Program-made: the position numbers and the translations under genes
Notes under the pieces: generated by a model
The model's input: the letters and a program-made list of their open reading frames with translations, nothing else
Database searches by the model: none
What the model was told of the DNA's origin: nothing
Source of the DNA: Octopus sinensis
Lineage: Eukaryota
Direction of reading: 5' to 3'
Assembly: GCF_006345805.1 (NCBI RefSeq)
Contig: NW_021836177.1
Location: 13,441 to 77,440, forward strand
Length of the DNA: 64,000 bases
In this document: positions 5,100 through 61,107 of the stretch, in pieces
Numbering within the stretch: position 1 is the first letter of the stretch
Layout of the letters: each line of letters starts with the position of its first letter

Positions 5100-8868
<3,769 letters not shown>

Positions 8869-8988: not shown

Positions 8989-10310
8989 CTAGCAGAATTG
9001 CCCGGCGATGCTCGGGACTGATTTGCTTGAAAGTACTGTTAATGATTGCACTGAATTATGATGATTATTCAGGCAAATATTTATATAAGTTTACGGTGGG
9101 AGATAAGGACTTAACGATCAAACGTGTGCCATTGCATTGTTTTGGGGGAACCAAATTTCTAATGAGCATTATAGGGGCACCAACTTTAAGTTTGAGAATG
9201 TGTGGTGGTAGTCCGGGGGTCTCAAAGGATCTGAGTACCTCTATTGGATAGTTGATGACGTCCTCTGGGTCAGGAGTTGTATCGATAGACTTATATACAT
9301 AGACATCCCCAGGAATGAGTTTTAGCATTTCATCATTAATATGGTGAACAGTTTTATTCCTCGGGACCAGAATAGCCCTTTGGCCAATCCAATCCATATT
9401 CTGATAATTAGCTTGTAGATCTGGGAACACTGCATCTCTGAGATCAGAAGGCGTTTTAACGATGGTACAAATGGAATCGATGGCAATATTACCATTTTCA
9501 TCCCCTGGTATTTTGCCTTCGCCAAGTGCAAGGAGGGTGTGAGGAAATGCTGCTGATGTGATATCACGTCGCATATGAGCATGCATATTGGTGTGAAGTT
9601 TGAGAGTCTTCACCAGTGGCCACAATGTGGATGACTTAAGACACGCACTTACTGCATCAGCTCTAGTCCCTTTGGGAATAACGGGAAGTGTTTGTCGGAA
9701 GTCCCCTGAAAGAAGAAGTGTTATGCCTCCCATGGGAGCTGAAGAGTGTTTGATGTCTCTGAGAGATCTATCTAGTGCCTCAAGAGCACCTCTGTGGGCC
9801 ATCGTGCATTCATCCCAAACGATAAGCTTGCATCGTCTGAAGACTTCTGCCTGATCGGAGCTGTTACTGATGTTGCAAGTTGTTGGTGTCTCAGTCTTCG
9901 CTAAGTCAAGCGGAAGCTTGAAAGTGGAGTGAGCTGTCCTGCCGCCTGGAAACAAAGTAGCCGCAATTCCAGATGATGCCACAGCTAGGGCAATGCCTTG
10001 TGTTCGCCTAATCTCAGCCAATATTAATTTGTTGAGAAAAGTTTTCCCAGTGCCCCCAGGAGCGTCCAGGAAAAAAATCCCCCCCAGCTTTGGCCCGGAC
10101 TGAATTAGCAACGGAGTTGTGAGCGAACTTCTGTTCTGGAAGGAGCTTTGGCTCATTGTCGGCTATGTACTCGGCAAGCTCGTCAACATTAAAACATTCT
10201 CACGCAGCAAATGTGAAGACAGAGTGTTTGTGCCTTCCCGGTTTGTTGAAGGTAGGCTATAGACCGGCAAGGCACTACCGCCCATATCAAGTACAGTATC
10301 TTCGAACGTA
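8989..10310 (-). mobile_element. Helitron fragment encoding PIF1-family helicase (ORF 9065..10156) joined to a Helitron 3' terminus
   Basis: DAPGGTGKT (Walker A), IVWDECTM, GDFRQTLPV and LIRNL motifs. Hairpin CCCGAG-CATCG-CCGGG and CTAG at 8989-8992, with a T beyond it. Confidence 0.9.
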
Positions 10311-11080: not shown

Positions 11081-14000
11081 CATCATCATCATCATCATCA
11101 TCATCGTTTAACGTCCGTTCTCCATGCTAGCATGGGTTGGACGGTTCGACCGGGGATCTGGGAAGCCAGAAGGCTGCACCAGGCTCCGGTCTTATCTGGC
11201 AATGTTTCTACAGCTGGATGCCCTTCCTAACGCCAACCACTCCGTGAGTGTAGTGGGTGCTTTTTACGTGCCACCTGCACTGGAGCCAGGCGAGGCTGGC
11301 ATTGGCCACGGTCGGATTGGTGCATTTTACGTGCCACCTGCACGGAAGCCAGTCGAGGCGGCACTGGCTTCGGCCACGATTCAGATTGCACTTTTTACGT
11401 ATCTCCAGTCCAGGGGTCCTGGCATCTGCCGGGTGCCAGTCATAGGATTGGTTCAATTTCGATTCCGATTTCACTTGCCCCAACAGGTCTTCGCAAGCAA
11501 AGGGGGGTAGGCATGGGTGCCTGTCGTCGGATGAGGTTCGATATCGACTTCGCTTTTCTCAACAGGTCTTTGTGTGTCCAAGGGAGGAAAGGCATGCATA
11601 AGTGGGCTGGACTCACTTGTCCTGCCTCGTCTTTTCACGCACAGCATATTTTCAAAGATCTCGGTCGCAAGTCATTTCCTCAGTGAGACCTAAAGTTCGA
11701 AGGTCGTGCTTCACCACCTCAGCCCAAGTTTTCCTGGGTCTACCTTTACCACGGGTTCTCTCCACTGCTAGGGATTGGCACTTTTCACACACCTATCTTC
11801 ATCCATTCTCGCCACATGACCATACCAGCGCAATCATCTCTCTTGCACACCACAACTGATGCTCCTTAAGTCCAACATTTCTCTCAGGGTACTAACGCTC
11901 TGTCGAGCATGCACATTGACATTACACATCCATCGGAGCATACTGGCTTCATTTCTCGCGAGCTTACGCATGTCCTCAGCAGTCACGGCCCATGTTTCAC
12001 TGCCATGTAGCATGGCTGTTCGTACACATGCATCATACAGTCTGCCTTTTACTCTGAGCGAGAGGCCTTTTGTCACCAGCAGAGGTAAGAGCTCTCTGAA
12101 CTTTGCCCAAGCTATTCTTACTCTAGCAGTTACACTTTCACCACACTACCCCCACTACTGACTTGGTCACCAAGATAACGGAAGCTATCAACTACTTCTA
12201 GTTTTTCCCCCTGGAAAGTGACGGAAGTTGTTTTCTGCAGATTTTCAGAGGTTAATGCTCCCGAGCATCTGCCACATACGAAAACTATCTTCCCAGTTAG
12301 CCTTCCTTTGACATTGCTGCACCTCTTATGTGTCCATAGCTTACACTGGGTACATCTTATAGAGTTTTTACCTACACCTTTTCTACAGATCGAGCAGGGC
12401 CATATTCCTGAAGACATTTGTGGATTGTCTACCTTCCTACTTATTAGTACTTTGGTTTTAGCTAGGTTGACTCTAAGGCCCCTCGATTCTAGACCCTTCT
12501 TCCACACCTGGAACTTCTCCTCCAGTTCTGATAGTGACTCAGCAATTATAGCAAGGTCGTCAGAATATAGGAGCTCCCAGGGGCAACCTGTCTTGAATTC
12601 CTCCGTAATTGCCTGGAAGACTATGATAAATAGGAGGGGGCTGAGGACTGAACACTGGTGGACCCCAACTTCTACTTTGAATTCTTCTGTGTACATGTTG
12701 CAAACCCTAACCTTACTTACGGCATCCCTGTACATGGCTTGCACAGCCCTCACCAGCCATTCATCTATCCCTAGTTTCCTCATTGACCACCAGATAAGGG
12801 ATCGGGGGACCCTGTCAAAATCTTTCTCCATGTCAACGAAAGCCAGGTACAGGGCTTATCTTCGGCTAGGTATTTCTCCTGCAGTTGTCTCACCAGAAAT
12901 ATGGCATCAGTGGTGCTTTTCCCTGGCATGAACCAAACTGCATCTCGTCCAAGTTGACTCTCTCCCTAATCAGTTGGGCTATGACCCTCTCTGTAACCTT
13001 CATTACCTGATCCAACAGCTTGATACCTCTGTAATTATTTGTATCTAGGGCGTCTCCTTTACCTTTGTAGCAGTTGACTAGTATGCTGCTACACCAGTCA
13101 TTGGGTATGACTCCTTCGTGTATCACCTGGTTAACTATACGGGTGACTAGGTTATAGCCGACACTGCCAGATATTTTGAGCATCTCTGCAGTAATTCCTG
13201 ATGGGCCTGGGGCTTTCCCTGTCTTCGTGCTTCTAATTGCCTTAACTACCAAAGAATTGTCAACTCGGATGGCTGGTCCCTCTGTTGGGTCGACATTTGG
13301 CAGACTCTCTTTCTCCCATTCATTTTCTTTATTCAGCAACCTTTCATAGTGGCGTCTCCAAACCTCTCTCTTTGCATCCTCATTTAGCGCAAGTGAACCA
13401 TCATCCATGCGGACACATTTCTCTCCTACCACATCACGATTCTCTCTCACACACTGTCTTGCAACACGAAATACCTCAAGTCTTTCATCCTCACGGCGCA
13501 GAACATTGGCAAATTTGTTCTTATCCGCTTCCCCTCTGGCTAAATAATACCTGTCTCCTAGCTTCCCTTCTGGCTATCTGATACAACTCCCTGCTACCAC
13601 CGTTCTTCCAGTCCTTCCAAGCCTGTCTCTTTTGTCTAATAGCCCTGTCAACCACCTTGTTCCACCACCACGTTACTCTGGGTCGAGAGGGGACTTTGCT
13701 CTATCCACAGATCTGGTCAGTGGCTGTCAGCAGATTGTCCCGTAGAAATCTCCAGTTGTCTTCCACATTAAGTGAAGCTATATCCCCTTCTATTTCGTCA
13801 AAGGCTTCCAGTAGTATGTCTCTAAATCTCTGTCCATTTGCAGGATCTTTAAGCTTCCAGACCCTTCTCCTCCAAGCTGGTCTTCTTCTGGGCAACCATT
13901 TAGCTCTGATCCTGATGTCGCTAACTACTATTCTATGTTGAGGAGTACATTCTTCGCCTGGAAAGGTTTCGGCATTTATAAGCAGCCCTCTTTCCCTCTT

Positions 14001-15180
14001 TCTGTCGAGGATGTAGTCAATCTGACTAGTGTGTCTGCCAGAACGGTAGGTGACTAGGTGAGAGGTGGGTTTCCTGAAGTTGGTATTGCAAACCATAATT
14101 TCATTTGCATCGCAGAACTCCAGCAGCCTGGTTCCCTCCTCATTTCGGGAGCCAAAACCGTAGCCTCCATGAACGCCATGGAAGCCCCCCGACATGCCGT
14201 CCAACATGTCCATTGAAATCACCTGCCACAAAGAGAAGGTCACTGCCATTTGTCAACGAGGTAGTCCGCAATAGGGTGTCGTAGAATTGGTCTTTCTGCC
14301 CTTCCGGTAGCCCTGGTTGAGGGGTATATGCCGAGATGATAGTAGCTGACCTATGGTGAAGCTCTAATCTAATCTTAAGTACTCTATCACTTGCTCTGAC
14401 TACCTCGATTACCTTATCTACCCATTTCTCTGCAAGAAGGATACCCACGCCCCCGACCCCGTCAGTGTTCCCTGCCCAGAAAATCTTGTACCTGTGTTCC
14501 TTGCCTGTGAGGAGCCTAGCGGAACCTCCTCTCCACCTTACTTCCTGGATGCAGCATAAATCCACACGTCTCCATTCAAGCAGCTCAACAATCTCTCCAG
14601 ACCTACCTTTCAATGTCCCAACATTGAGTGTGCCAACTCTGAGGGTGTGGGAGGTGTGGGCCTCTGAGACCCTGGGATGAGGGACAGCCGTGTCATGTAC
14701 CTGAAAAGAAAGCTTGCACTAGGCAGATTTCATATTGAAACACGAGGCTACAACCTGCATACATTTCACAGTTTTTGCGCTTTATGATCAAATAAACCCT
14801 ACATAGGGGTACGGTTGGGGGGTAGTCAAGTAAGGTAGGGGTAGAAACTTCCGGTATTAGTGGAGGGGGTGAGACTACAACCTGCATAAGTTTCACCGTT
14901 TTTGCTCTATATGATCAAATAAAACCGACATAGGGGTGCGAGTGGATGTATACGCGGGGTGGGGGAGACAAGACAGACGTAGAAACTTCCGGTATTGGTG
15001 GAGGGGGTGGGAGGGCGGGCGCTCAAGGAGCAACGAGGTTGAATATAATTCGTAGGGATGCAACAAAAATTACACATCATCTAGAAACTTTGGAAATTTG
15101 AGTAGAACATAATTTAAATGAGAGGGAGAGAGAGTATTTTGTAAGGAATTCTGGGGGAATGGAATAACACGGGATGGCCC
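11081..15180 (-). mobile_element. Full-length-like RTE LINE, multiply frameshifted
   Basis: Minus-strand ORFs 14140..14613, 13701..14249, 12890..13450, 12130..12831 and 11834..12076 are paralogous to the first RTE. (GAT)n tail at 11081-11105. ~130-bp tandem duplication in the 5' UTR (14741-15010). Confidence 0.93.
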
Positions 15181-25157: not shown

Positions 25158-26818
25158 TATACATAAATATATATACATATATATATATATACACACAGAT
25201 ATATATATATATATTTTATATAATATTATATATTATATATATATTATATATATATATATTTATTATATATATATATATATATGTTATATATATATATATA
25301 TATATATATACATAGGAAGGTAGACAAATCACAAACACCTTCAGGTAGATGGCCCTGCTCGATCTGTAGAAAAGGTGTAGGTAGAAACTCTATAAGATGC
25401 ACCAAGTGTAAGCTATGGACACATAAGAGATGCAGCAATGTCAAAGGAAGGCTAACTAGGAAGATGGTTTTTGTATGTGGCAGATGCTCAGGAACAATAA
25501 ACACTGAAAATGCTCTGAGACCAACTTCCATCACTTTCCAGGGAGAAAAACTAGAAATAGTTGATAGTTTCCGTTACCTAGGTGACCAAGTCAGCAGCGG
25601 GGGTGGGTGTGCTGAAAGTGTAACTGCTAGAGTAAGAATAGCTTGGGCAAAGTTCAGAGAGCTCTTACCTCTGCTGGTGACAAAAGGCCTCTCGCACAGA
25701 GTGAAAGGCAGACTGTATGATGCGTGTGTACGAACAGCCATGCTACATGGCAGTGTGAAACATGGGCCGTGACTGCTGAGGATATGCGTAAGCTCGCTAG
25801 AAATGAAGCCAGTATGCTCCGATGGATGTGTAATGCCGGTACTCACACTCGGCAGAGTGTAAGTACCTTGAGAGAAAAGCTGGACCTAAGAAGTATCAGT
25901 TGTGGTGTGCAAGAGAGACGTTTGCGCGTGGTATGATCATGTGGCGAGAATGGATGAAGATAGTTGTGTGAAAAAGTGCCACACCCTAGCGGTTGAGGGA
26001 ACCTGTGGAAGAGGCAGACCCAGGAAAACCTGGGACGAGGTGGTGAAGCACGACCTTCAAACTTTAGGTCTCACTGAGGAAATGACTAGAGACTGAGACC
26101 TCTGGAAGTGTGCTGTGCGCGAGAAGACCCGGCAGGACAAGTGAGTCCATAACCCGTGGCCTTCTACATGGGATGGAGCCAGCCTACGTATGCATACCTT
26201 CCCTTCTTGGGACACAAAACTCTACTTGTGAAGACGTGTTGAGGCAAGTGAGGATCAGAATCGAAATCGATCAATGGAAATTGCGGATATGCTACCAGTG
26301 CGGTGGCATGTCGAAACTCTGCTTGTGAAGACCTGTTGAGGCAAGTGAGGATCAGAATCGAAATCGATCAATGGAATTGCAGATGTGTTACCAGTGCCGG
26401 TGGCATGTAAGAGAACTTTCCGTTTCGCGACCGTTGCCAGCACCGCCCCGTTTCGTGTCCGTTGCCAGCCTCGTCTGGCCCTCGTGCCGGTGGCACATAA
26501 AAAGCACCATCCGTTCGTGGCCGTTTGCCAGCTCTGTCTGGCACCAGTGCGGGTGGCACGTAAAAAGCACCCACTACACTCACGGAGTGGTTGGCGTTAG
26601 GAAGGGCATCCAGCCGTAGAAACACTGCCAGATTTGACTGGGCCTGATGAAGCCTTCTGGCTTCACAGACCCCAGTAGAACCGTCCAACCCATGCTAGCA
26701 TGGAAAACGGACGCTAAACGATGATGATGATGATGATGATATAGGCTTCGAATGTCCCATCTGTGTTTTTTGTATTGTCTTGCATTCTTGTAATGTTTTG
26801 CATTCTTGTCCCAGTTTG

Positions 26819-39534: not shown

Positions 39535-41419
39535 GTCAATCAGCGAAACAATAATGGTTGGACACCTCTACATCTTGCCTCTAATCAAGGACACACAGAC
39601 ACAGCTAAACTTCTCCTACAACAAGATGGCACTGATGTGAGGGTGGTGGACAACGATGGTTGGACACCTCTACATCGTGCCTCGTATAATGGACACACAG
39701 ACACAGCTAAACTTCTCCTACAACAAAATAACACTGATGTGAGGGTGGTGGACAACGCTGGTTGGACACCTCTACATCGTGCCTCGTATAATGGACACAC
39801 AGACACAGCTAAACTTCTCCTACAACAAGATGGCACTGATGTGAGGGTGGTGGACAACGCTGGTTGGACACCTCTACATCGTGCCTCGTATAATGGACAC
39901 ACAGACACAGCTAAGCTTCTCCTACAACAAGATGGCACTGATGTGAGGGTGGTGGACAACGCTGGTTGGACACCTCTACATCGTGCCTCGTATAATGGAC
40001 ACACAGACACAGTTAAACTTCTCCTACAACAAAATGGCACTGATGTGAGGGTGGTGGACAACGCTGGTTGGACACTTCTACATCGTGCCTCGTATAATGG
40101 ACACACAGACACAGCTAAACTTCTCCTACAACAAGATGGCACTGATGTGAGGGTGGTGACCAACGCTGGTTGGACACCTCTACATCATGCCTCGTATAAT
40201 GGACACACAGACACAGCTAAACTTCTCCTACAACAAAATGGCACTGATGTGAGGGTGGTGGACAACGCTGGTTGGACACCTCTACATCGTGCCTCGTATA
40301 ATGGACACACAGACACAGTTAAACTTCTCCTACAACAAAATGGCACTGATGTGAGGGTGGTGGACAACGCTGGTTGGACACCTCTACATCATGCCTCGTA
40401 TAATGGACACACAGACACAGCTAAACTTCTCCTACAACAAGATGGCACTGATGTGAGGGTGGTGGACAACGCTGGTTGGACACCTCTACATCGTGCCTCG
40501 TATAATGGACACAGACACAGTTAAACTTCTCCTACACACAAATGGCACTGATGTGAGGGTGGTGGACAACGCTGGTTGGACACCTCTACATCGTGCCTCG
40601 TATAATGGACACACAGACACAGTTAAACTTCTCCTACAACAAAATGGCACTGATGTGAGGGTGGTGGACAACGCTGGTTGGACACCTCTACATCGTGCCT
40701 CGTATAATGGACACACAGACACAGTTAAACTTCTCCTACAACAAAATGGCACTGATGTGAGGGTGGTGGACAACGATGGTTGGACACCTCTACATCGTGC
40801 CTCGTATAATGGACACACAGACACAGTTAAACTTCTCCTACAACAAAATGGCACTGATGTGAGGGTGGTGGACAACGCTGGTTGGACACCTCTACATCGT
40901 GCCTCGTATAATGGACACACAGACACAGTTAAACTTCTCCTACAACAAAATGGCACTGATGTGAGGGTGGTGGACAACGCTGGTTGGACACCTCTACATC
41001 GTGCCTCGTATAATGGACACACAGACACAGTTAAACTTCTCCTACAAACAATGGCACTGATGTGAGGGTGGTGACAACGCTGGTTGGACACCTCTACATC
41101 GTGCCTCGTATAATGGACACACAGACACAGTTAAACTTCTCCTACAACAAAATGGCACTGATGTGAGGGTGGTGGACAACGATGGTTGGACACCTCTCCA
41201 TCTTGCCTCTAATCAAGGACACACAGACACAGCTAAACTTCTCCTACAACAAAATGGCACTGATGTGAGGGTGGTGACCAAATATGGTTGGACACCTCTA
41301 CATCTTGCCTCTAATCAAGGACACACAGACACAGCTAAACTCCTCCTACAACAAAATGGCATCGATGCCAATAAAGCGGACAATGATGGTGACACTCCTC
41401 TCCATGTGGCAGTTCAAGG
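39535..41419 (+). CDS. Coding exon 4: 19 ankyrin repeats in a 102-bp (34-aa) tandem array; frameshifted as assembled
   Basis: ttttttAG acceptor and GG|GTAAGT donor. G-x-TPLH motifs start at 39556+102n up to 41388. Deletions of 2 nt (~40510) and 1+1 nt (~41045, ~41073) split it into ORFs 39637, 40493 and 41163. Restoring 4 nt gives 1889 nt, which is the required phase 2. Confidence 0.93.
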
Positions 41420-42207
41420 GTAAGTCCCCAATGGATTTGGATTATCCAAATCTGTTTCTTTAATGTTTTCAATAACGTTTGTTTTCTTGTTTTGAGTCAT
41501 TCATGTCATAATCCCACCATGGGACGTCGTGCTTCAACTCTCTCTCTCTCACACTCTAATGACACTGTAACCTACTTCATTAATTAATCATCATAATTAT
41601 TATTGTTGCTGTTGTTACCTGACTAGATTCTTTACTTCATCTCATCCTTCGTTACCTCAACGTTACAAGTTCAAATCTTTCCTTTTCTCTTTTCTTTCAT
41701 CATTATAAACACACCCTCACCCCTCTCTCTTGTAATTTTCCTCTTTCCTCTGACCCTGGGCTAAATACATCATTCCCTTACAGTGTTTAGTTTGATCTCT
41801 TTATGTTCCAAGTTCAAATCCTGCCAGAGTATTTATTAACAACCTGGAGTGAAAATCTGTACCAGTAATATCCAGGGGTTCATTTATAAATTGTCCTCCC
41901 TCTTTTCTTCCTCCTGTTTTTGTGTCTGATTGCTGTTGGGCAAAATACCTTGTGGTGTTTATTTACCACACTTTATGTTCAGAGTTCAAATCCTGCTGAG
42001 GTCACCTTGTCCTTCCATCTTTGCTAGGCTAATAAAATACAATACCAGTCATGTACTGGGGTCCTTATAATCCACATTAACGCTTCTCCCCATCCTAAAT
42101 TTCATGGCTATATAACAGTTGTTCATCATACCATATATAGATTGCCGTGTTTACTCAGGTGTGTATATATATCGTTGATCTATAATGTAGAGAGTATATT
42201 GAATATA

Positions 42208-48221: not shown

Positions 48222-48561
48222 AAATATATCTATATATATATATATATGTGTTTGTGTGTATCTCACTTCCATAACATTCATGTATATGTGTGTGTATGTA
48301 CAGGAATGTTAAGGATGTGGACACTAACCAACTCACCTGTTTTATGAACCCCTTATTAATATAGCAACATCATAATTCTTCTTTACTAGTTTTGATCTGC
48401 TAATTATATGTCACTCTTGTTCTGCTCCCCTAAATTTACTATAGTGAGAGATAAATATAGATTAGGATGAAAACAATCTGTTTAAGACCTCTTAATAGAT
48501 TATCATGTCCCTTACACATATCCCATGTACATTTTCAATTTCTATTTTTACTTCCACAAAG

Positions 48562-48777
48562 GATTCAGTGAAACTGGATATCGAGAATCATAAGAAATGA
48601 CACCATTGATGGAAGCCGTTTCAGGGTTGGGGCCCACCTCGGAATAATCCATAAACTTATTATAAATGGTGCAACATAAATGCTGTCAACAATGATGGCA
48701 ATAATTGTTTGCACCTCTCAATAATAAAAAAAGAGATGTTCCATTCTGAGGTGGAACCCATTCCCATTTTAGATGAG
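48562..48777 (+). CDS. Coding exon 6, ankyrin repeats (KMTPLMEAVS..GHLGIIHKLIINGANINAVNNDGNNCLHL); internal indels
   Basis: cacaaAG acceptor and GAG|GTAAGT donor. The ankyrin reading needs +1 A at AAGAAATG and at GCAACATA, and correction of a G/C-run segment near 48625-48635. Confidence 0.78.
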
Positions 48778-49880: not shown

Positions 49881-50893
49881 GTGTGTGTGTGTGTGTGTTT
49901 GTTTTGAAAGACCTCAGCATCTATCCACTGCTAGATCCGATGGTGTCTATTGTCTGTTGTTGCAGAATTTAAGCAACTCTTTGATTCCCAAATATGTGTG
50001 ACTGTATTTCAGACAGTTAATGGTCACCTATGTATTGTTGTAATGTCTTCTTTGGTGAGAAGAAGCTACTCTAGCAGTCAACGACCCATTATTATAGGAA
50101 TTGTCTATCAGACTAACAGTTTCAACAATTTCTTGACTATAATCTGTTGGTGTGTTGCCTCAACCACTACACCAATCCTTACTTCCTTTACTTCACTTCA
50201 TCAGCCAAAAATGTTTCTTTATAAATTTTGGAAACATTATTGATATGCTTGGATATGTCTGTCTGGTGTTGGTTTTGTTGCTGTGTCTGAAGAAATTATT
50301 ATGTTCTTGGTGTTCTCTGTTCATTGTTTGTTGTTATGGAAATGAGTTGTACTTTGTGACCAGTGAAACGTTTCCCAATCAATATTTGGATTATCGAAAT
50401 TACCAGTAGGAAAATATGGGTGACTGCTTTCATAGATGCAGATCTGAAGATGTCAAAAATCTGAGTTTTGATGGCAGTTTTGCAGATGGTAAACAAATTC
50501 AAGTAGGAGTATATATGTTGCTAAAAAATACTACTCTTGTTGCGACCAGTTTAAATCTCCATAAGGAATTACAGAAAATCTGAGTGACCATAGACCATCA
50601 GACGACCCCCATGGTAATTAGAATGGCCTTTGTGTAACAAAATGTAGCTTGCCATTGTTTGTTGTTATGTTGTTGTGTTATATTTATATATACAATACTC
50701 TTCCATAAGTATTTCTTTGTTATGGCCAGTTGGCTTTATCAAGCCAGTTGTAAAGATAGGTTCTTGTTGGTTTGTTGTGTTCTGTTATTTGTGATACTTG
50801 TTCCATTATTTTCCTACATTTGACATGATTTGTTTATCTACATATATATTTGTGTAATATTCTACTCATCGTTTTATATTTCATCATTTGCAG

Positions 50894-51069
50894 TGCTGCA
50901 GAGAGCTCCAACTGGACATGGATAGGAGGCTCTCTGGAATAGTAGTTTTGAGTTACCTTGCCAGCCAAGGAGCCAGCTTATACCATCATAATAATAAGAA
51001 AATGACCCCATTGGACTACATAGAAAATCAACATTTGAAAGAAAAATTAAAAACATTTTTACAATCACT
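50894..51069 (+). CDS. Coding exon 7 (CCRELQLDMDRRLSGIVVLSYLASQGASLYHHNNKKMTPLDY...), last ankyrin-like repeat
   Basis: tttgcAG acceptor, GTAAGT donor, 176 nt, phase 0 to 2, open frame (ORF 50888..51073). Confidence 0.9.
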
Positions 51070-52062
51070 GTAAGTACTCACTGGCAACGACAAGATAAAC
51101 CAGGACATTTTCTCTTTTGTATGTAATCATGTTTATATGTTTATTTAGTTTGAATTCTCCCAATGTATTATTCCGTCATTAGTGTCTTGACTCAAGATAA
51201 CAATAATGATTTCCAATTCTGGCACAAAGCCAGCAAGGTCAGGGAGGGGATAAGTCAATTACAACAGCCCCAGTTTTCAACTGGTACTTATTTTATCAAC
51301 AGCAAGGTAGAGTCAACCGCAGCTGAATTTGAACTCAGCATGTAAAGGCAGACGAAATGCCAGAAAGCATTTTCTCCGTGTGCTAATGATTCTGCCAGCT
51401 TGCAGCCTTAAGACCACACAACAATAATAAGAACAATAAACAGAAAATACAGTTGTTAGTGGATCAAACGAAAAACACTATTTTGATGACATTCACATGA
51501 TTGCTTGTGTTGACAGATATACCTCACCATCCACCCCTGACTATTTTAGAGTTCGGTGACCTCCATGAAAATGTAGTACTAAATAATAAAGTGAATGAAC
51601 ACATTTTGAAATTGCTATTTAGAAGTAAATAGGATTTATCTGTCTACCAACAATTTTTTTCTCTCTCTCTCTTCTCTGACTCAATTAGTTGTCATGTACG
51701 CTTTCATGTGAAAATAACCTAAAACACACACTAACAATGTGTATGTCATCATCATCATCATCATTTAACGTCTGTTGTCCATGCTGGCATGGATTGGTCT
51801 GTTTGACTGGGATGGCATGTTGGAAGGCTGCACCTTAGTCAGCCTTTGAAGTTTTCAGCCCAACCTTGTATGTGTATGTTAATGTGACACTTGTATACTC
51901 ACAAACCTGCTTGTATGTAATTGTTTACAGAAGAATTTACGATGTACTCTTGCTGGTTACTGTTGTGCCCCTTAATATTCTGTACTCTAAACATGTCCAC
52001 AACGAAATATTTTATTATAAATGAATGTTAATGATGGGATGTGTTAATATTTTGTTCCACAG

Positions 52063-52200
52063 GTGTCGGTGGTGTCAAGAAAAAAGGCTACTGTCACACT
52101 CCATCCATGTCAACATACCGTTACTTGTCAGAATTGCTGTTCTCAATGACATTTAAGCAATGCCCCATATGTCATCAACACATACACCGGAAGTGGATTT
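52063..52200 (+). CDS. Coding exon 8, RING finger (CRWC...PCQH...CQNC...CPIC); indels as assembled
   Basis: ttccacAG acceptor and GTAAG donor. The C3HC4 ligand spacing appears after adding one A in the A-run at ~52080 and one at CAATG ~52146. The 3' end needs a further indel correction to give phase 1. Confidence 0.82.
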
Positions 52201-53048
52201 GTAAGAACATTCTTTCTTGATCTGTCTGTTGTCTCATTAACTTTCTGGTATGGAATAATGCATTTCATATTGTAGTGGAGACATGCAACTCCTTGTTTGT
52301 AACTATATATTATGAACACTTGTTATAATGTTTGCCATCCTTTTAGACATTTTATACTCACACTCGTTAGTTTTTAGATGTGATTAATGCTAAAAGAGAC
52401 ATTGTTTTCTGACTCTTTCACCTTTTGGCTTTACTTTTGAGTTGATTCGTTTTAATTCGAACATGAAGCCTGGTCATTGCTCCAAGGTGGTATCAGAAAG
52501 TTCACGGACTAGTTCTGTAGCATGCCAACAGATGGCTGCACACCGTTGCGCGCACAGTGAGAGCTAGCAATGACTTTCATGAGGCAGTGTGCTGGGTGAC
52601 ACCACTGCGTTTACTTCAAAAGTTGTGAAATTTGTGCTTTTGTGGTCATTTGTAGGCTGTAGTCTGCAATTTTCTAATGGGCAGGAACAAATAACCAATG
52701 TGAAATTTTGCGTTAAACTTGTCCAGCAAAGACATAAGAAAGAAACAACAAAACTAAAAGAAAAAGAGTGTTATGAAGTGATAACTGAATGAGAGAATTT
52801 CAGAATTGTTAGATTAGTATATAGGATGTCTTAAGAGAAAGATGAGATTTAGAAAGGTTTGCCTATTTTGTTGTGGTTCTAAATATTGAACTATTATTTA
52901 GTAACAGCTTAGAAAGTGTTGACCGAAAGCATAGTGGTCACCAATTGACTATTGATGATATGAATGCCTTACAATAATGGAATATAGATTATTAAAAGAG
53001 ACAAAGAAATTTTACTATGAAGTATAAACTTTGAAATGCTTATTTCAG

Positions 53049-53099
53049 TGTGTCCAAAGTCTGAAGAAGAAGCAGCAAAGGCAGTTGCAGAGTCTGTTG
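53049..53099 (+). CDS. Cassette exon 9 (CPKSEEEAAKAVAESV), phase 1-1, paralogue of exon 12
   Basis: atttcAG acceptor, GTTG|GTGAGT donor, 51 nt, open. Confidence 0.65.
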
Positions 53100-53214
53100 G
53101 TGAGTATAAAATAACTGTAATTGATTTCTATAAATTTTACCTTCACCTGAGTTATATTATTTGTGTGAGTGTCTGAGAACAGGTTCCATTCCTAATTTCC
53201 AATTCTTATTTCAG

Positions 53215-53263
53215 TGTGTCCAAAGTCTGAAGAAAAGCACCCGGGCGGTTGTAGAATCTGTTG
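53215..53263 (+). pseudogene. Cassette exon 10, tandem copy of exon 9, 2 nt short (pseudo-exon or assembly error)
   Basis: First 20 nt identical to exon 9, same splice sites, 49 nt so not frame-preserving. Confidence 0.5.
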
Positions 53264-53278
53264 GTGAGTATAAAATAA

Positions 53279-53515
53279 CTGTAATTGATTTCTATAAATT
53301 TTACTTTCACCTGAGATATATTGTTTTTTTGAATGACTGTATTGATTTTCCTATAACTTTTACTGTTCACCTGAGATATATTGTTTTTTGTGAATGACTG
53401 TAATTGATTTCTATAAATTTTACTTTCACCTGAGATATATTGTTTTTGTGAATGACTGTAATTGATTTCTAAAATTTTACTTTCACCTGAGATATATTGT
53501 TTTTTGTGATGACTG
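53279..53515. repeat. ~59-bp minisatellite, 4 copies, derived from intron sequence just downstream of the exon 9/10 donors
   Basis: Units start CTGTAATTGATT at about 53279, 53337, 53398 and 53456. Confidence 0.85.
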
Positions 53516-53852
53516 AGAACATTGTAGGAAAGAGAAGACACAATGAAGAAAAACAGTGTTATCAAGTGATAATTGAATGAGATATTCGCAGAAATTTAGA
53601 TTATGTAGGCTGTCTTAATAGAGAGAGAAAAGGGGAGGAATTTAGGAAGGTTAGTCTATTTTGTGTGTCCCTGAATATTGAGCTTTAACATAGTATCACG
53701 GTAGAAAGTATTAAAATATTAGCCAAACCATAGTGGTCACCAGTTGACCATTGATAATAGGAATGCCTGACAATAATAAAATATAGACTATTAAGAAAAA
53801 TAATTTAAAAAAATTTAACTATACATTGTAAACTTTTAAATATTTATTTCAG

Positions 53853-53923
53853 AGAGTTTATTTTGGAGGAAACCGCTTCCATAGCACATCGAAGAAAAGT
53901 GGCAGTTAAGCAACAGCAAGTTG
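53853..53923 (+). CDS. Cassette exon 11 (EFILEETASIAHRRKVAVKQQQV), paralogue of exon 12, 1 nt short
   Basis: tatttcAG acceptor, CAGCAAGTTG|GTGAGT donor identical to exon 12, 71 nt versus 72 nt. Confidence 0.5.
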
Positions 53924-54779
53924 GTGAGTATAAAATAAGTCCGTAAGTGATTTCAAATTAGTTTTACTTCACTTGAGCATATTTTGTTTTTCAGAAGGAC
54001 TGAGAACAGGTTCCATTCTTAATTTTCAATTAATAATTCTTTTGAAGAAATTGCTGAAATTTAAGAGAATGCCCACCAAGGTTAGAACAGACAAAAGTTA
54101 ATGATGTCTTTTGGAATAGAGAACTAAAATATGTTATTTGGTTGGGGGTGAACAAGTGCTTTAACGACAAGGCTTTCGTTTTGCATTTATACTGTGTTTA
54201 CTAATAAGTTGTTGTTTTAGCAGGAGTCTCTCATAATCTGGCAGACTTACAATGAAATGCATTCCCAGTGTCAACATCCTGTCTTTTTGTCACTGATAGG
54301 AAATCTATCATTACATCCATTAAACACATTGTCTTTATCGAAGTAGAAAACACTGGCTTGCTACTGAGATAACCATTGCTTCTTTGTTGTTTTTCTCTCT
54401 CTCTCGCTTTCTCTTTTTGATATATACTAGATGCAAGATACAATAAATGACATTGTCCTCATCATTTATCATCAGATAAATGTTCCTGTGGAATGGATGG
54501 TGGAGGGTGGGGGTGGGTCACTGTCCAAGTCAGTTCTTATTAGCAGTTACTGTCCACCTTCATTGGTTGAGGATCATGTCCCACTAAAACATTCCAGCTT
54601 TCCTATGATGGTCTACCCTTCCTAACACCATCCACTTTATAAAGGATCCTGGGTACATTTTATTGTGGCACAAATACAAGAAAGATTGTTATGTATTCAA
54701 CAAAATTAAACATTCCTCTCGAACTTATGCAAAGAAATATCAGACATGTTGAAAGAGGAAAGGAAAGTAAATGAATTAG

Positions 54780-55342
54780 AGAGCACTCGTTAAGAAACCT
54801 TATGAGGTTACTCGGAAGCTGTTTGCAGATGCTAAGAGTGGCAGGATAAAATGTAATAAATGAAATCCAACTTAGGTATGGTTAGTGGTCAGTAGGATAG
54901 CTAGAAAAGCATTTTTAGCTATCCCTACTGACCACAATTATATATATATTTAACTTTTTGTTTTATTATTTACTAATTTGAAATTTCACCAGTTACAATC
55001 TGCTTTATTTTTGCAGCTATTAATCTTGTCCATTTCTGCTGCAAGGTGATGAGTAAGTACCAGTGTGTTACTGGGATTGATGTAATCAATTAGTCCCTCC
55101 TCTGTAATTGCTGGCCTTGTACCAAAATTTGAAACCAATATTACCCATCCCCGTTCAACTGTCTTCAATTCGCACACTGCTACATGAAACCACAACATGC
55201 CATTACGGGTTTATTTCTGCTAGTTATAGGCCTGAATGTCCATGTTAGCTAACTGCAGGTTACTCTCATGGTCAGATGATTAACCTTGGCCATTACATTG
55301 TATTGTTTAAAAAGAAACAATGTTTTAGTAGTTGAATTAAGC

Positions 55343-55379
<37 letters not shown>

Positions 55380-57300
55380 ATTCATTCTCTGAGTTCAGTA
55401 CCTACTTGGGTTGACTTTGCATTTCATTCCTCACGGGTCAGTAAAACAATTACAAGTTACATAACATGTCAAACTAATTGACTTCATACTCTCTCTCTAC
55501 AGATCTATCCACTTGTATTAATCGAAGAATTCATAATTAACATTCATTTTTCAAAACCCTCGTTACCACACTATATTGCTGTCCAACTGAATCATCTCTT
55601 CCAATCATATCAAGTAAAACCTTCAGCTTTTCTGTATATTTTGGTGAGACTTCAGTTGGCTTTTTAGTGAGACTGATTGTTTGGTGTTTTAGAACATGAC
55701 CTTTAAACCAAGTATTGAGAAGACGACCCATCAAGCCAAGTAAAATTGCAGTCGTGGCAGATACTGGTGCCGTGCTGGTGGCATGTAAAAGCACCCATTG
55801 CACTCTGGGAATGGTTGGCATTAAGAAGGGCATCCAGCCGTAGAAACCATGCCAAATCAGACTGGAGTCTGGTGCAGCCTTCCAACTTGCCAGCCTCAGT
55901 CAAACTGTCCAACCATGCCAGCATGGACAGTGGACGAATGTGATGATGAACTGGAGGGGCACATACAGGAGATCTACACTGATCCTAAGTGAGATAATCC
56001 ATTCCCACTCATGACAGTTTGAAATGCCCCAAAAAAACCATGAATCAAATCTCAACTTGGTGGTTTCTAGCAGAAACAATTATATAGCTGAGTGAAGAAG
56101 GCAAAAGCAAAGAGTGCCCCAGGAGGTGATGGTGTATCATAGAAAGTGTACAGGTATTGTACACAATTATGTTATTATAAGCTGTACTTAAAGAGTTGTG
56201 GCATAAAGGTGAAATGGTTGATGACTAGTACAAGGCAGAAAAAAATTACTTACCAAAGAAAGCTGAAACAGAACTGATTGAGCAGTTCAGACCCTTTTCA
56301 ATCTTGAATGTAGATGGCAGATTTATATGGTCCATTGCCAAGAGATCAGCTACACATCTCCAAAATAATGACTATGAGACCGAGAGTGTCCAGGATGCTG
56401 GAATTTCCAGAACCACTGGATGAGTAGAACATGATTTTTCAATCTGCAATGCAATACAAGACACAAAGAAGAATAAAAGGGATTTGAACGTTGTATGACC
56501 TGATCTTGTTGATGCTTATGGTTCTGTACCACACAAATTAGTGATGGAACCAATGAACTTCTTTTATATATGAGAGAAGATTAGAGATCTGGCTAGAAAC
56601 TGCTGTAATAATTTCAAAATGTGGTTCCTGACAGAAAATTTCACAACAGACATCGTTTTGAAACTGTAATTGCTGTAGGTTACACAATATCAGTCATTTG
56701 GTTTGTACTTGTTATGGAGATGTTACTTAGATCAGCAGATTGATCAGAAGAATTGGCTTGAGTGAAATCACCCAAGAAGGAATTTAAAGGATGATATAAC
56801 AATACTAACAAGAGACCAAAAGGGTATGCAAATAGTTCTGGATGGACTGGATTAACTAATTCTTTGGTCAAGAATGGGGTTAAACCAAATAATTAATGCT
56901 GTCATTTGTCAAAAGGTTAGTTGAAGCAAGTGAAGTTCAAAACAGCATACAAAACCATGCAAGGGATTAAAGAGAAACCTCTAAAATCTTTTGGACGATG
57001 GTATGCTACCTCATTGTCCAGTAAGAGTAGAGGTATAGAGGTCATGGCACAAACTGAAGATGGGTTAAAGGCAATAGCTAAGACAACATTTCCTAGCAAA
57101 TAAAAGATTTGATGCTTCCAGTTTGATCTGTATCCCTGCCTTGCTTATAAAATCCTTGAGTATCAGTTTTTATGCAACATTTCAGATTTTTTTACTGCTA
57201 TTATTTATGGATGAACAATTATATATAGTTAATAAGATTTTGTGAGAGCATAAAGTGTTTTTGGATACCTGATATGTTTTTGCTCCCCTCTGTAGAATTA
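54780..57300 (+). mobile_element. HERO/NeSL-like non-LTR retrotransposon remnant in the intron before exon 12
   Basis: AKSAPGGDGV, QFRPFSILNVDG, DLVDAYGSVPHK and TISVIWFVLVMEM peptides with stops. Confidence 0.7.
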
Positions 57301-57669
57301 ATCATTGCCCACCTGGAAAGAAATGTGCTTCATTAAGAAGTCTTCTAACATCTCAAATACATGTGGCACATATATAAGAAACAAAAAATGAAAACTAAAA
57401 GAAAAACAGTGTTATCAAGTGATAATTAAATGAGATAATTGTAACATTGTTAGATTATTTAAGATGTCTTAATAGAGAAAGGAAATTGAGGAAGGTTAGT
57501 CTATTTTGTTGTAGACCTAAGTATTGAGCTATTTACCTGTTGACCAAAAACATAGTGGTCACCCGATGACCAGCGATGATGATAGGTATGTCCCACTATA
57601 TAATAAAATATAGATTATTAATAAAGAATTTTTACTCTCAAGTATAACAGTTGCAAATATTTATTTCAG

Positions 57670-57741
57670 AAACTCCAAAGTTAGAGGAGAAGTGTCTCCA
57701 AGATGTTGCAAAATTGTTAGGAGTCAACTGGCAGCAAGTTG
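57670..57741 (+). CDS. Coding exon 12, N-terminal part of death domain (TPKLEEKCLQDVAKLLGVNWQQV)
   Basis: atttcAG acceptor, GTGAGT donor, 72 nt, phase 1-1. Matches the death-fold pattern L-x2-VA-x2-LG-x2-W. Confidence 0.87.
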
Positions 57742-58699
57742 GTGAGTATAAAATAACAGTACTTAATTGATTTCAATAAGTGTCAGCTTTTGTTTGTCAG
57801 CATGACTAAGAGAAGATCCCATTCCTACTTTCCAATTGAAAGGCTAGCTGTAAAGTGATTCTATTAAAGGTGTTGGTGTTATGTGTAGTTTCGTTCTAGA
57901 TGGGTGATGGACATTGTTATTGTTTTACGTGTTTATTTACTTCACTTGTTACACGAACTGTCAGCATTCGGCGTAGTGATACATATATACTTTAGACACA
58001 GTTCGTACTGTTTACTAACAAAATAGTGCCAAAAGTGGGGATGTATTCTACACACGTATACCTACGTATACACATAGATATGAATGTGTAACAGTTGGTA
58101 TTACTGAAACATCATAAAATAGCCACCGAGATTAGCGGGGTCAGTAAAATGGCTAAATTAGAGGACATAATCGATTTAATATTGTCTTTTGAGAGAGCAA
58201 ATTAAAATATGTCATTTAAGGGTAAACTGGTGAGTTAATGATAATTTTTTTTTTGTTTGTTTTACATTTTTACTAAGTTTACGTTTTGTTGTTTTTTATT
58301 TGCAAAATGCCTGTTTTAATCAGAAATACGATGGAAAGTGTTTCAGGTGGGACATCTCTGTCTTTCAGTTGGTAGTACAGGACTACATCATTAAGTGCAT
58401 CCTTTTTTACATGCTCCTGTGTATAGTGAGTGGCATGTTGCAGTCACTCCACTGTCCAGTGTCCATTTAGTTGTGAACCACTCTTCACTGACATGTAATG
58501 GTTGATTGTACGTAGGTGGATGGTGTTTATGTTGGTGATTCCTGTCTTCTTTCCTGCAAGTTAAAACTCTCCTCTTTGCTTGGTTTAACTTAACACCTCT
58601 CTATTACACTGGGTAACAACGATTTTTGTCCATGGATAACAATTGTTATTTCCAATTTGCTTAACCCTAGAAAATACGAGAATGGCTAGTATCTCCTTC

Positions 58700-60901: not shown

Positions 60902-61107
60902 GCAGGAATTTAGGAATCAAAAATGTTGATCTGGGGATTATCAGGACTGACTATCCTCATAACACTAAAGAGCAGAGCTTCCAGATGCTGCACACATGGT
61001 ACACAAGTTGTGATCCAGAGATGCGAACATTCAAAACACTCAGAAAAGCTCTTGAGGAAGCTGAATGCTTTGAGGCACTTCAATGTCTACCATCAGAAGA
61101 AAAGTGA
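60902..61107 (+). CDS. Terminal coding exon 13, remainder of death domain (GRNLGIKNVDLGIIRTDYPHNTKEQSFQMLHTW...LRKALEEAEC) and stop
   Basis: ttttgcAG acceptor in phase 1, TGA at 61105-61107. Matches the death-domain pattern LG...I...YP...EQ.FQML..W.......L..AL. Confidence 0.9.

What the first reader, a model, noticed from the sequence alone, without database searches (positions are those of the whole stretch)
52725..57840. Death-domain first exon exists as four paralogous phase-1 cassettes
Exons at 53049, 53215, 53853 and 57670 all use ATTTCAG acceptors and GTTG|GTGAGTATAAAATAA donors. Three sit in ~500-bp duplicated units with homologous upstream (…CAGTGTTATCAAGTGATAA…GTGGTCACC…) and downstream (CTGAGAACAGGTTCCATTC) intron sequence. 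The flanking introns remain easy to align, yet the coding parts differ strongly: only exon 12 keeps LGxxW. Symmetric phase lets them be skipped, chained or swapped, which could alter the RING-DD linker or replace helices 1-2 and switch the domain on or off. Exons diverging faster than introns hints at diversifying selection (inference).
Basis: partly seen in the sequence, partly recalled or inferred. Interest (0 to 1): 0.72.

Follow-up and report, generated by a model that had tools for sequence, protein, structure and literature searches.

The report
Octopus RING–death-domain linker exon array
The four look-alike mini-exons are real tandem duplicates in an octopus-specific ankyrin–RING–death-domain gene family, where relatives stack them or skip them one by one to make a variable linker; in this copy two of the four, and the RING exon, are frame-broken.

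Summary
The sequence observation holds. Four exon-like segments (53049, 53215, 53853, 57670) share the ATTTCAG acceptor and an identical 19-nt donor. Three sit in ~500-bp duplicated units, and their exon cores (47-56% identical) are far more diverged than their flanks (74-81%).

The "symmetric phase" claim fails here. The lengths are 51, 49, 71 and 72 nt, so 53215 and 53853 break the frame. The RING exon and the ankyrin exon are frame-broken too, so this copy is probably a decaying paralogue, or possibly mis-assembled.

The window is an Octopus "MIB2-like" ANK-RING-death-domain gene. Nine related copies were fetched from O. vulgaris, O. sinensis and O. bimaculoides. The seven close O. vulgaris and O. 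sinensis copies run RING, then 0-8 cassettes of 51 nt, then normally one 72-nt exon, then the 72-nt death-domain exon 1, then the last exon. All of these are phase 1 and open.

RefSeq isoforms of one O. sinensis paralogue differ only in which 17-aa cassettes are present (0, 1 or 2 of 4), and all keep death-domain exon 1. So the cassettes are chained and skipped independently, not swapped.

Cassette exons are about four times more variable than their introns (pi 0.167 vs 0.039). That points to selection for distinct cassettes. I found no paper describing this. I rate it a new member of a known kind, of moderate interest.

The parts
39535..41420 (+). Large ankyrin-repeat exon of the same gene. 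It holds about 19 near-identical 99-nt repeats and is read in three frames as assembled, with frameshifts near 40510 and 41047-41075.
   Evidence: ORF scan, tblastn with P0006, 99-nt register print.
52063..52200 (+). It carries 4 deletions (5 nt) relative to the intact O. vulgaris orthologue. The donor is GGATTT|gtaaga, where relatives have ..TTTG|gtaaga.
   Evidence: The Pfam RING hit appears only after reading across three frames.
52725..53214 (+). Unit A: about 320 nt of conserved upstream intron, cassette 1, and 115 nt of conserved downstream intron.
   Evidence: Alignments.
53049..53099 (+). Cassette 1: 51 nt, phase 1-1, open (CPKSEEEAAKAVAESV). This is an intact 17-aa linker module.
   Evidence: It clusters with the first cassettes of L003, L004 and L010.
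53215..53263 (+). Cassette 2: 49 nt and frame-breaking. It is a degenerate copy of a 51-nt cassette, 166 bp downstream of cassette 1.
   Evidence: Comparable 49-nt cassettes occur at L007:8512 and L010:10072.
53274..53515 (+). 58-bp minisatellite, 4.1 copies, made from the cassette's downstream intron and containing no exon.
   Evidence: Tandem Repeats Finder and sequence.
53520..54040 (+). Unit C: conserved flanks around the 72-nt-type exon.
53853..53923 (+). 72-nt-type linker exon, 71 nt here, with a stop in phase 1. It has 3 indels relative to O. vulgaris, where it is 72 nt and reads SLNLDENRSHSTSKKVAVKQQQV.
   Evidence: The exon is included in RefSeq models P0015 and P0004 of relatives.
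55700..57100 (+). Decayed non-LTR retrotransposon (reverse transcriptase) remnant in the intron between units C and D. It is shared with the O. vulgaris and O. bimaculoides orthologues.
   Evidence: Translation, weak RVT_1 hit at E = 1e-4, synteny.
57370..57850 (+). Unit D: conserved flanks around death-domain exon 1.
57670..57741 (+). Death-domain exon 1: 72 nt, phase 1-1 (TPKLEEKCLQDVAKLLGVNWQQV). It supplies Pfam Death profile positions ~2-22 (helix 1).
   Evidence: Pfam gives 37.6 bits with this exon and 24.1 bits (profile 23-79 only) without it.
60902..61107 (+). Last coding exon: the rest of the death domain plus the stop codon (TGA at 61105-61107).

Best explanation
The four segments belong to a tandem exon-duplication array. 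The array lies between the RING exon and the terminal death-domain (DD) exon of an Octopus-specific ankyrin-RING-DD E3-ligase-like gene, auto-named 'MIB2-like' or 'ankyrin-3-like'.

Shown. The array arose by repeated duplication of a ~500-bp unit (DD exon 1 plus flanking intron) and of a 166-bp sub-unit. In the close intact relatives from O. vulgaris and O. sinensis every member is a phase-1/phase-1 exon: 51 nt = 17 aa, or 72 nt = 24 aa. All have the same strong acceptor and donor.

Shown at the level of gene models. The cassettes are used additively. They are spliced in series and skipped independently. This gives a linker of variable length and composition (V-C-P-K-x-E-E-K-A-V-x-x-V-x-E-S-V/F repeats) in front of the DD.

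Shown. Only the last member (57670 here) still encodes DD helix 1, and it is kept in every cassette isoform compared.

Shown as a pattern, inferred as a cause. Cassette exons fall into distinct sequence types shared across paralogues and species. Their introns are nearly identical. This suggests selection keeps cassettes different while the non-coding parts stay homogeneous.

Inferred. The copy in this window is degenerating. Cassette 53215 (49 nt), exon 53853 (71 nt), the RING exon and the ankyrin exon are all frame-broken. Only the path RING - 53049 - 57670 - last exon remains locally open.
For: - Identical splice signals, found 4 times, only here, on one strand. Units are homologous.
- Pfam finds RING plus Death. 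Exon 57670 supplies Death profile positions 2-22.
- Orthologous loci: O. vulgaris L002 is 94-95% identical and O. bimaculoides L001 is 86-92% identical.
- All seven gene copies from O. vulgaris and O. sinensis that were scanned for every element have the same order: RING, then 0-8 cassettes of 51 nt, then one 72-nt exon (lost in L005), then the 72-nt DD exon 1, then the last exon. The more divergent O. vulgaris copy L007 has the same plan, with its own DD exon 1 type and no separate 72-nt linker exon.
- Of 31 cassettes, 27 are exactly 51 nt, and all 27 are open in phase 1.
- Gene models with cassettes in frame: P0010, P0011, P0012 and P0013, P0015, P0016. The RefSeq model for L010 uses the five 51-nt cassettes and skips the 49-nt one.
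- Alignment A3: O. sinensis isoforms X9-X22 of one gene differ only in which of 4 cassettes are present, and DD exon 1 is always kept. There are further isoform length steps of about one cassette (16-18 aa) in other genes; the pairs whose sequences I compared differ by whole cassettes.
- Variability: pi is 0.167 in exons and 0.039 in introns. Variable sites are 27/51 against 16/75, p = 5e-4. dN/dS is about 1.4. Cassette 1 differs by 12.9% against 1.7% and 1.6% in its flanks. Cassette types are shared across loci, and exon and intron distances are uncorrelated.
- Degeneration here: 4 deletions in the RING exon against an intact orthologue; ankyrin frameshifts; 2-3 indels in each broken cassette.
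Against: - No transcript reads were available. Splicing evidence is from gene models only, and none is for this window's own gene.
- The five close O. vulgaris paralogues are annotated with the RING exon joined straight to the last exon, skipping every cassette including DD exon 1.
- The O. bimaculoides orthologue model P0004 chains a 46-nt, a 72-nt and a 69-nt exon, and it does so only by reading the RING exon out of frame. There the chain is not in frame with the RING.
- The window shows a 40:13 excess of 1-nt deletions over insertions relative to O. vulgaris, mostly in homopolymers. Some frame breaks could therefore be assembly errors.
- With 51-nt exons, dN/dS and diversity estimates are noisy, and the copies are not independent.
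Confidence: 0.7

Rival explanations
1. Assembly artefact. The 49- and 71-nt lengths and the RING and ankyrin frameshifts are homopolymer or short-repeat errors in a long-read assembly. On this view the real gene is intact, with four symmetric cassettes.
For: Relative to O. vulgaris the window has 40 one-nt deletions against 13 insertions, and 29 of the deletions are in homopolymers. All four RING-exon deletions sit in A or G runs. The ankyrin frameshifts sit in an ACAC run and a GG run within near-identical 99-nt repeats, which are hard to assemble.
Against: The same window carries an uninterrupted 681-aa reverse-transcriptase ORF and a 363-aa PIF1 helicase ORF. That is unlikely if indel errors ran at about 2 per kb. 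The broken cassettes also carry several substitutions, not only indels. Independent 49- and 52-nt cassettes exist in the O. vulgaris and O. sinensis assemblies, so real decay of single cassettes does occur.
Confidence: 0.25
2. Neutral relics. The extra copies (53049, 53215, 53853) are never spliced and simply decay. Only 57670 is a real exon.
For: Two of the three are frame-broken here. The O. vulgaris models skip them. The 72-nt-type exon diverges between O. bimaculoides and O. vulgaris at about the intron rate (6.9% against 5-10%).
Against: The 19-nt donor and the acceptor are perfectly conserved in all copies, while the flanks are only ~75% identical. 27 of 31 cassettes keep exactly 51 nt and an open phase-1 frame. 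Neutral relics should not be more variable than their introns, yet these are about four times more variable. Models from several annotation sets (NCBI RefSeq for O. sinensis and O. bimaculoides, the O. vulgaris genome annotation, and a UniProt O. bimaculoides entry) include them in frame.
Confidence: 0.1
3. Mutually exclusive, Dscam-like choice. One cassette is chosen per mRNA to replace DD helices 1-2.
For: The exons are homologous and in tandem, with identical splice sites and conserved intron elements upstream of each.
Against: Isoforms carry 0, 1 or 2 cassettes plus DD exon 1, and other models carry 4-6. The lengths differ (51 and 72 nt). Only one member keeps LGxxW. No docking/selector-type complementarity was found. 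Intron folds are no better than shuffles, with z between -0.4 and +0.7. 5' splice-site accessibility does not separate the cassette types.
Confidence: 0.03
4. Poison-exon switch. Frame-breaking members (49 or 71 nt here, 46 nt in O. bimaculoides) are included on purpose. This would create a stop just after the RING, giving DD-less ANK-RING protein or nonsense-mediated decay.
For: The O. bimaculoides RefSeq model P0004 includes the 46-nt exon, which in the RING frame reads TKD*. Frame-breaking cassettes keep perfect splice sites.
Against: The frame-breaking copies differ in sequence and position between loci, which looks like independent decay. The RefSeq model for L010 skips its 49-nt cassette. 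There are no expression data.
Confidence: 0.08

Closest known systems
Tandem exon duplication giving alternatively spliced exon arrays (general class; e.g. PMC8373072, PMC2432081 on adjacent cassette exons)
   Same: The exons are homologous, in tandem, of the same phase, and a multiple of 3 nt long in intact copies, with duplicated splice sites. Isoforms differ by which copies are present.
   Different: Most described duplication-derived events are mutually exclusive substitutions. Here use is additive and combinatorial. Copy number varies from 0 to 8 between very recent paralogues, and the exons are more variable than their introns.
Dscam-hv / mutually exclusive exon clusters with competing RNA structures (PMC3364881, PMC6071210)
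   Same: Arrays of duplicated variable exons inside one gene, with possible isoform diversification.
   Different: These cassettes are not mutually exclusive. No docking/selector complementarity was found. The protein is intracellular (RING plus DD), not a surface receptor.
Mind bomb E3 ligases (MIB1/MIB2), the name given by automatic annotation
   Same: Ankyrin repeats followed by a C-terminal zf-C3HC4_3 RING. From the literature, MIB2 acts on DD-pathway proteins such as RIPK1 (PMC5912950).
   Different: No MIB/HERC2 or ZZ domain was found in the full-length paralogue P0006. It also has a C-terminal death domain that MIB proteins lack. The close relatives whose source I looked up are all from Octopus.
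Gene families whose exons evolve faster than introns (e.g. snake-venom genes, PMC6062510; conotoxins and PLA2 from my own knowledge)
   Same: Coding parts are more diverged than adjacent non-coding parts.
   Different: Here the effect is concentrated in mini-exons of a cytoplasmic signalling protein. Part of the diversity is old cassette 'types' sitting in homogenised introns. Positive selection has not been formally shown.

Membership tests
Death domain (Pfam PF00531) | Profile match above the curated cut-off, covering helices 1-6 | tested here: met
   Window exons 57670 plus 60902 score 37.6 bits against a cut-off of 22.6, over profile positions 2-79 of 86. The last exon alone scores 24.1 bits over profile 23-79. 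In the AF2 model of paralogue P0010 the DD part is helical with pLDDT 75-88.
RING finger zf-C3HC4_3 (PF13920) | Intact C3HC4 cysteine/histidine pattern in one reading frame | tested here: inconclusive
   The match (35.9 bits) appears only when the window exon is read across three frames. The O. vulgaris orthologue is intact in one frame.
Mind bomb (MIB1/MIB2) E3 ligases | N-terminal MIB/HERC2 and ZZ domains in addition to ANK repeats and RING(s) | tested here: not met
   Pfam on the 750-aa paralogue P0006 gives only Ank families, one RING and Death. 'MIB2-like' is therefore a similarity-based name, not membership.
Additive cassette-exon array from tandem exon duplication | Homologous tandem exons with their own conserved splice sites | tested here: met
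Additive cassette-exon array from tandem exon duplication | Same phase at both ends, length a multiple of 3, open frame | tested here: inconclusive
   Met for 53049 and 57670. Not met for 53215 (49 nt) and 53853 (71 nt) in this window. Met in 27 of 31 cassettes and in all 72-nt exons of O. vulgaris and O. sinensis.
Additive cassette-exon array from tandem exon duplication | mRNAs that differ by inclusion or skipping of individual cassettes | tested here: inconclusive
   This is seen in RefSeq isoform sets of paralogues. From my own knowledge, such isoforms are built on RNA-seq support. No reads were available, and there is no model for this window's own gene.
Mutually exclusive exon cluster (Dscam type) | Exactly one exon of the cluster per mRNA | tested here: not met
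   Isoforms carry 0, 1, 2, 4, 5 or 6 cassettes.
Mutually exclusive exon cluster (Dscam type) | Docking site complementary to a selector near each exon | tested here: not met
   Only AT-rich, chance-level inverted repeats were found. Fold z-scores are not significant.

The most novel reading that the evidence does not exclude
The cassette array could be a diversity generator in an intracellular immune or cell-death adaptor. Each 17-aa module would be kept different by selection and spliced independently. N cassettes would then give up to 2^N linker variants per gene, multiplied over many young tandem paralogues that gain and lose cassettes quickly. Some modules carry CPxC, so adjacent cassettes might build small zinc-binding knuckles whose number is set by splicing.
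Probability: 0.15. Interest if true: 0.7.

Novelty: new member of a known kind. Interest (0 to 1): 0.45.

Why it matters
Three features occur together in one octopus gene family. Exon copy number turns over quickly, from 0 to 8 cassettes among paralogues only 2-4% diverged. Cassettes are skipped in combinations. The exons are about four times more variable than their own introns. Together they offer a compact natural system for studying how tandem exon duplication creates modular linkers, and whether selection can hold mini-exons apart while the surrounding DNA stays uniform.

The family sits on a RING-plus-death-domain scaffold. In other animals that scaffold belongs to cell-death and innate-immune signalling, so the variable linker may matter for cephalopod immunity.

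There is also a practical point for annotation. Current O. vulgaris models drop the cassettes and DD exon 1. One O. bimaculoides model reads the RING exon out of frame. The copy in this window is probably a pseudogene.

Tried and rejected
- **Splice-site hairpin.** I tested whether a hairpin that sequesters the 5' splice site (GUGAG pairing with UUCAC ~40 nt downstream) marks alternative cassettes but not the constitutive DD exon. Whole-intron folds are no better than shuffles. Computed 5' splice-site accessibility does not separate types A and C from type D. Rejected.
- **Docking/selector pairing.** For mutually exclusive splicing I looked for complementary sites. Only low-complexity inverted repeats turned up. 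Rejected.
- **Dispersed transposable element.** I asked whether the ~500-bp unit is a repeat that merely carries splice-like sites. Apart from two short matches next to units in L001, unit sequences matched only cassette positions in the three related loci compared by blastn (about 80 kb) and within the window. Rejected.
- **CpG decay.** This accounts for variation at only a few cassette positions (about 32-35). It does not explain the bulk of the variation (my inspection).
- **O. sinensis isoform locus.** Look-ups of P0016 and P0015 failed because only the longest isoform is indexed. P0162 worked.
- **Structure of the cassettes.** AF2 with a shallow alignment gave pLDDT below 50 for the cassettes, so no fold can be claimed. 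Pfam hits of the cassette chain to CxxC zinc-ribbon families have no single significant stretch. I treat that as a lead only.
- **Literature.** Three full-text searches on octopus, cephalopods, death domains, MIB2 and O. sinensis splicing found no paper describing this family or its cassette array.

Full report
**1. What is in the window**

The region is eukaryotic, AT-rich and full of microsatellites. The + strand carries one gene from about 34995 to 61107.
- It has two short 5' exons and a 1.9-kb exon of about 19 near-identical 99-nt ankyrin repeats (39535-41420).
- Two more exons follow (48532-48777 and 50891-51070), then a RING exon (52063-52200).
- Next come the four exon-like segments of the finding, then a last exon (60902-61107) with a stop codon.
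- Pfam on the conceptual product finds a zf-C3HC4_3 RING and a Death domain.
- Exon 57670 supplies Death profile positions ~2-22 (helix 1). The last exon alone covers only positions 23-79.

**2. Check of the observation**

The donor 19-mer GTTGGTGAGTATAAAATAA occurs exactly four times in the 64 kb, all on the + strand. Each occurrence is preceded at 49-72 nt by ATTTCAG. This cannot be chance.

Units 52725-53215, 53520-54040 and 57370-57850 align along ~320 nt upstream and ~100 nt downstream of the exons. The segment at 53215 is a 166-bp local re-duplication of 53049. A 58-bp minisatellite made from the downstream intron follows it.

The exon lengths are 51, 49, 71 and 72 nt.
- In phase 1, 53049 reads CPKSEEEAAKAVAESV and 57670 reads TPKLEEKCLQDVAKLLGVNWQQV.
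- 53215 shifts the frame, and 53853 has a stop.
- The 'symmetric phase' statement is therefore true for only two of the four.
- As assembled, exon 8 ends with T, so joining it directly to 57670 gives TAA. The path 8 - 53049 - 57670 - last exon is open.

**3. Relatives**

Protein searches found only Octopus proteins as close hits.
- O. vulgaris locus L002 is 94-95% identical to window 43-63 kb, with 3.8% substitutions.
- O. bimaculoides contig L001 is 86-92% identical. Both are positional orthologues.
- Six further paralogous copies from O. vulgaris (two in L003, plus L004, L005, L006 and L007) and one from O. sinensis (L010) were fetched.
- The seven close O. vulgaris and O. sinensis copies, including L002, run in the same order. 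The RING exon comes first, then 0-8 cassettes of 51 nt at a 166- or 154-bp period.
- One 72-nt exon follows (SLNLDENRSHSTSKKVAVKQQQV, lost in L005), then the 72-nt DD exon 1, then the last exon. L007, a more divergent copy, has cassettes followed by its own DD exon 1 type and no separate 72-nt linker exon.
- Of 31 cassettes, 27 are exactly 51 nt, and all 27 are open in phase 1. Three are 49 nt and one is 52 nt.

The symmetric phase-1 design is therefore ancestral. The window's 49- and 71-nt versions are derived, with 2 and 3 indels relative to O. vulgaris.

**4. State of this copy**

The RING exon has four deletions (5 nt) relative to the intact O. vulgaris exon. The ankyrin exon needs three frames.

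Some of this could be assembly error. The window has a 40:13 excess of 1-nt deletions, mostly in homopolymers.

Three points argue against that.
- The same window holds an uninterrupted 681-aa reverse-transcriptase ORF and a PIF1 helicase ORF.
- The broken exons also carry extra substitutions.
- Single frame-broken cassettes occur in other assemblies too.

I judge a decaying paralogue more likely than an artefact, at roughly 60:25. This is not settled.

**5. How the cassettes are used**

No reads were available, so the evidence is gene models.
- In frame with RING and/or DD are P0011 and P0012 (O. bimaculoides: RING plus 1-2 cassettes) and P0010 and P0013 (O. vulgaris: 4 and 6 cassettes plus DD).
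- O. sinensis RefSeq P0015/P0162 has RING, 5 cassettes, the 72-nt exon, DD exon 1 and the last exon. It skips the 49-nt cassette at that locus.
- Most telling, fourteen RefSeq isoforms (X9-X22) of one O. sinensis gene are identical except for cassette content. Each carries none, one or two of four cassettes, and some also use a 5-aa alternative acceptor.
- DD exon 1 is present in all of them.
- Steps of about one cassette (16-18 aa) between isoforms recur in other O. sinensis and O. bimaculoides genes. Where I compared the sequences (O. sinensis 312 vs 295 aa; O. bimaculoides 563/545/528 aa), the isoforms differ by whole cassettes.

This fits additive, independent cassette skipping. It contradicts mutually exclusive swapping.

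Two sets of models disagree.
- Five O. vulgaris models join the RING exon directly to the last exon.
- The O. bimaculoides orthologue model P0004 chains 46-, 72- and 69-nt exons, but only by reading the RING exon out of frame.

**6. Exons versus introns**
- Between unit types A, C and D, in six gene copies, upstream flanks are 74-76% identical, downstream flanks 77-81%, and exon cores 47-56%.
- Among 27 intact cassettes, diversity is 0.167 in the exon and 0.039 in the first 75 nt of intron.
- Variable sites number 27/51 in the exon against 16/75 in the intron (Fisher p = 5e-4). Pooled dN/dS is about 1.4.
- Among five O. vulgaris paralogues, cassette 1 differs by 12.9% while its flanks differ by 1.7% and 1.6%. 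The 72-nt exon and DD exon 1 are near intron level.
- Between O. bimaculoides and O. vulgaris, DD exon 1 differs by 14.5% against 5-7% in its flanks.
- Cassettes fall into sequence types shared across paralogues and species. Exon and intron distances are uncorrelated, r = -0.02.

The flanking intron changes at about the background rate between the window and O. vulgaris (5.3% against 3.8%). Strong constraint on the intron is therefore not the main cause.

My reading is inference. Either exons diverged adaptively after duplication, or introns are continually homogenised while selection protects the cassette differences. Both imply selection for distinct cassettes.

**7. Mechanistic ideas tested and dropped**

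No docking/selector complementarity was found. Intron folds are no better than shuffles. 5' splice-site accessibility shows no difference between types. AF2 gives a confident DD but pLDDT below 50 for the cassettes, which is consistent with a flexible or helical linker.

**8. Comparison with known systems, and novelty**

This works like other arrays of cassette exons created by tandem exon duplication. It is not a Dscam-type cluster.

The proteins are not true Mind bomb ligases. They have no MIB/HERC2 or ZZ domains, and they have an extra DD.

Three full-text searches aimed at this family found no description of it or of its cassette array, although RefSeq already annotates the isoforms.

I rate it a new member of a known kind, with interest 0.45. 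The family-level pattern is attractive: rapid cassette turnover, combinatorial skipping, and exons more variable than introns. The instance in this window, however, is a partly broken copy, and the functional claims await transcript data.

Noticed in passing
window 39535-41420 (+): One exon holds about 19 ankyrin repeats of 99 nt that are almost identical to each other. It looks like a very young internal expansion. Two frame breaks sit in an ACAC run and a GG run.
   Followed up: partly
window 53274-53515: A 58-bp minisatellite (4.1 copies, 91% matches) built from the intron segment just downstream of the cassette donor. The O. vulgaris orthologue has three more complete 166-bp cassette units (five in all) at this position.
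   Followed up: partly
window 6605-8650 (+), 12130-14613 (-), 25281-25772 (+): There is an intact 681-aa LINE-type reverse-transcriptase ORF (RVT_1, 101.7 bits, plus a weak PHD finger). Fragmented copies of the same element lie on the other strand and further downstream.
   Followed up: partly
window 9065-10156 (-): A 363-aa ORF with PIF1-like helicase domains (202.8 bits). From my own knowledge this looks like part of a Helitron-type element.
   Followed up: partly
window 1187-2176 (+): A 42-bp minisatellite that reads as a 329-aa ORF of the 14-aa repeat MVYDQNSGNLLDCS. Its Pfam hits are repeat artefacts.
   Followed up: partly
window ~55700-57100 (+); L001 10261-12635; L002 16565-19395: A decayed reverse-transcriptase remnant sits in the intron before DD exon 1. 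It is shared by all three species, so the insertion predates their split.
   Followed up: partly
L002, L003, L004, L005, L006 (O. vulgaris models P0001, P0005-P0008): The deposited O. vulgaris gene models join the RING exon directly to the last exon. This drops DD helix 1 and all cassettes. At L007 the gene is split into two models, ANK-RING and cassettes-DD. These look like annotation problems.
   Followed up: partly
L001 1774-18131 (O. bimaculoides XP_014771760.2): The N-terminus of this RefSeq model (MDNAPYVNNTYSAKVDL) is the RING exon translated out of frame. The unit-A exon at this locus is only 46 nt and would give a stop in the RING frame.
   Followed up: yes
L005 11312: In one O. vulgaris paralogue the 72-nt linker exon has been deleted down to TTTCAG|CAAGTTG|GTGAGT, so acceptor and donor are almost fused. 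That copy has no 51-nt cassettes either.
   Followed up: no
Cassettes in L002, L003, L004, L006, L010: Many cassettes read CPxC (CPKC, CPRC, CPMC) at a 17-aa spacing. Chained, they give weak hits to CxxC zinc-ribbon families. The window's own cassettes read CPKS instead.
   Followed up: partly
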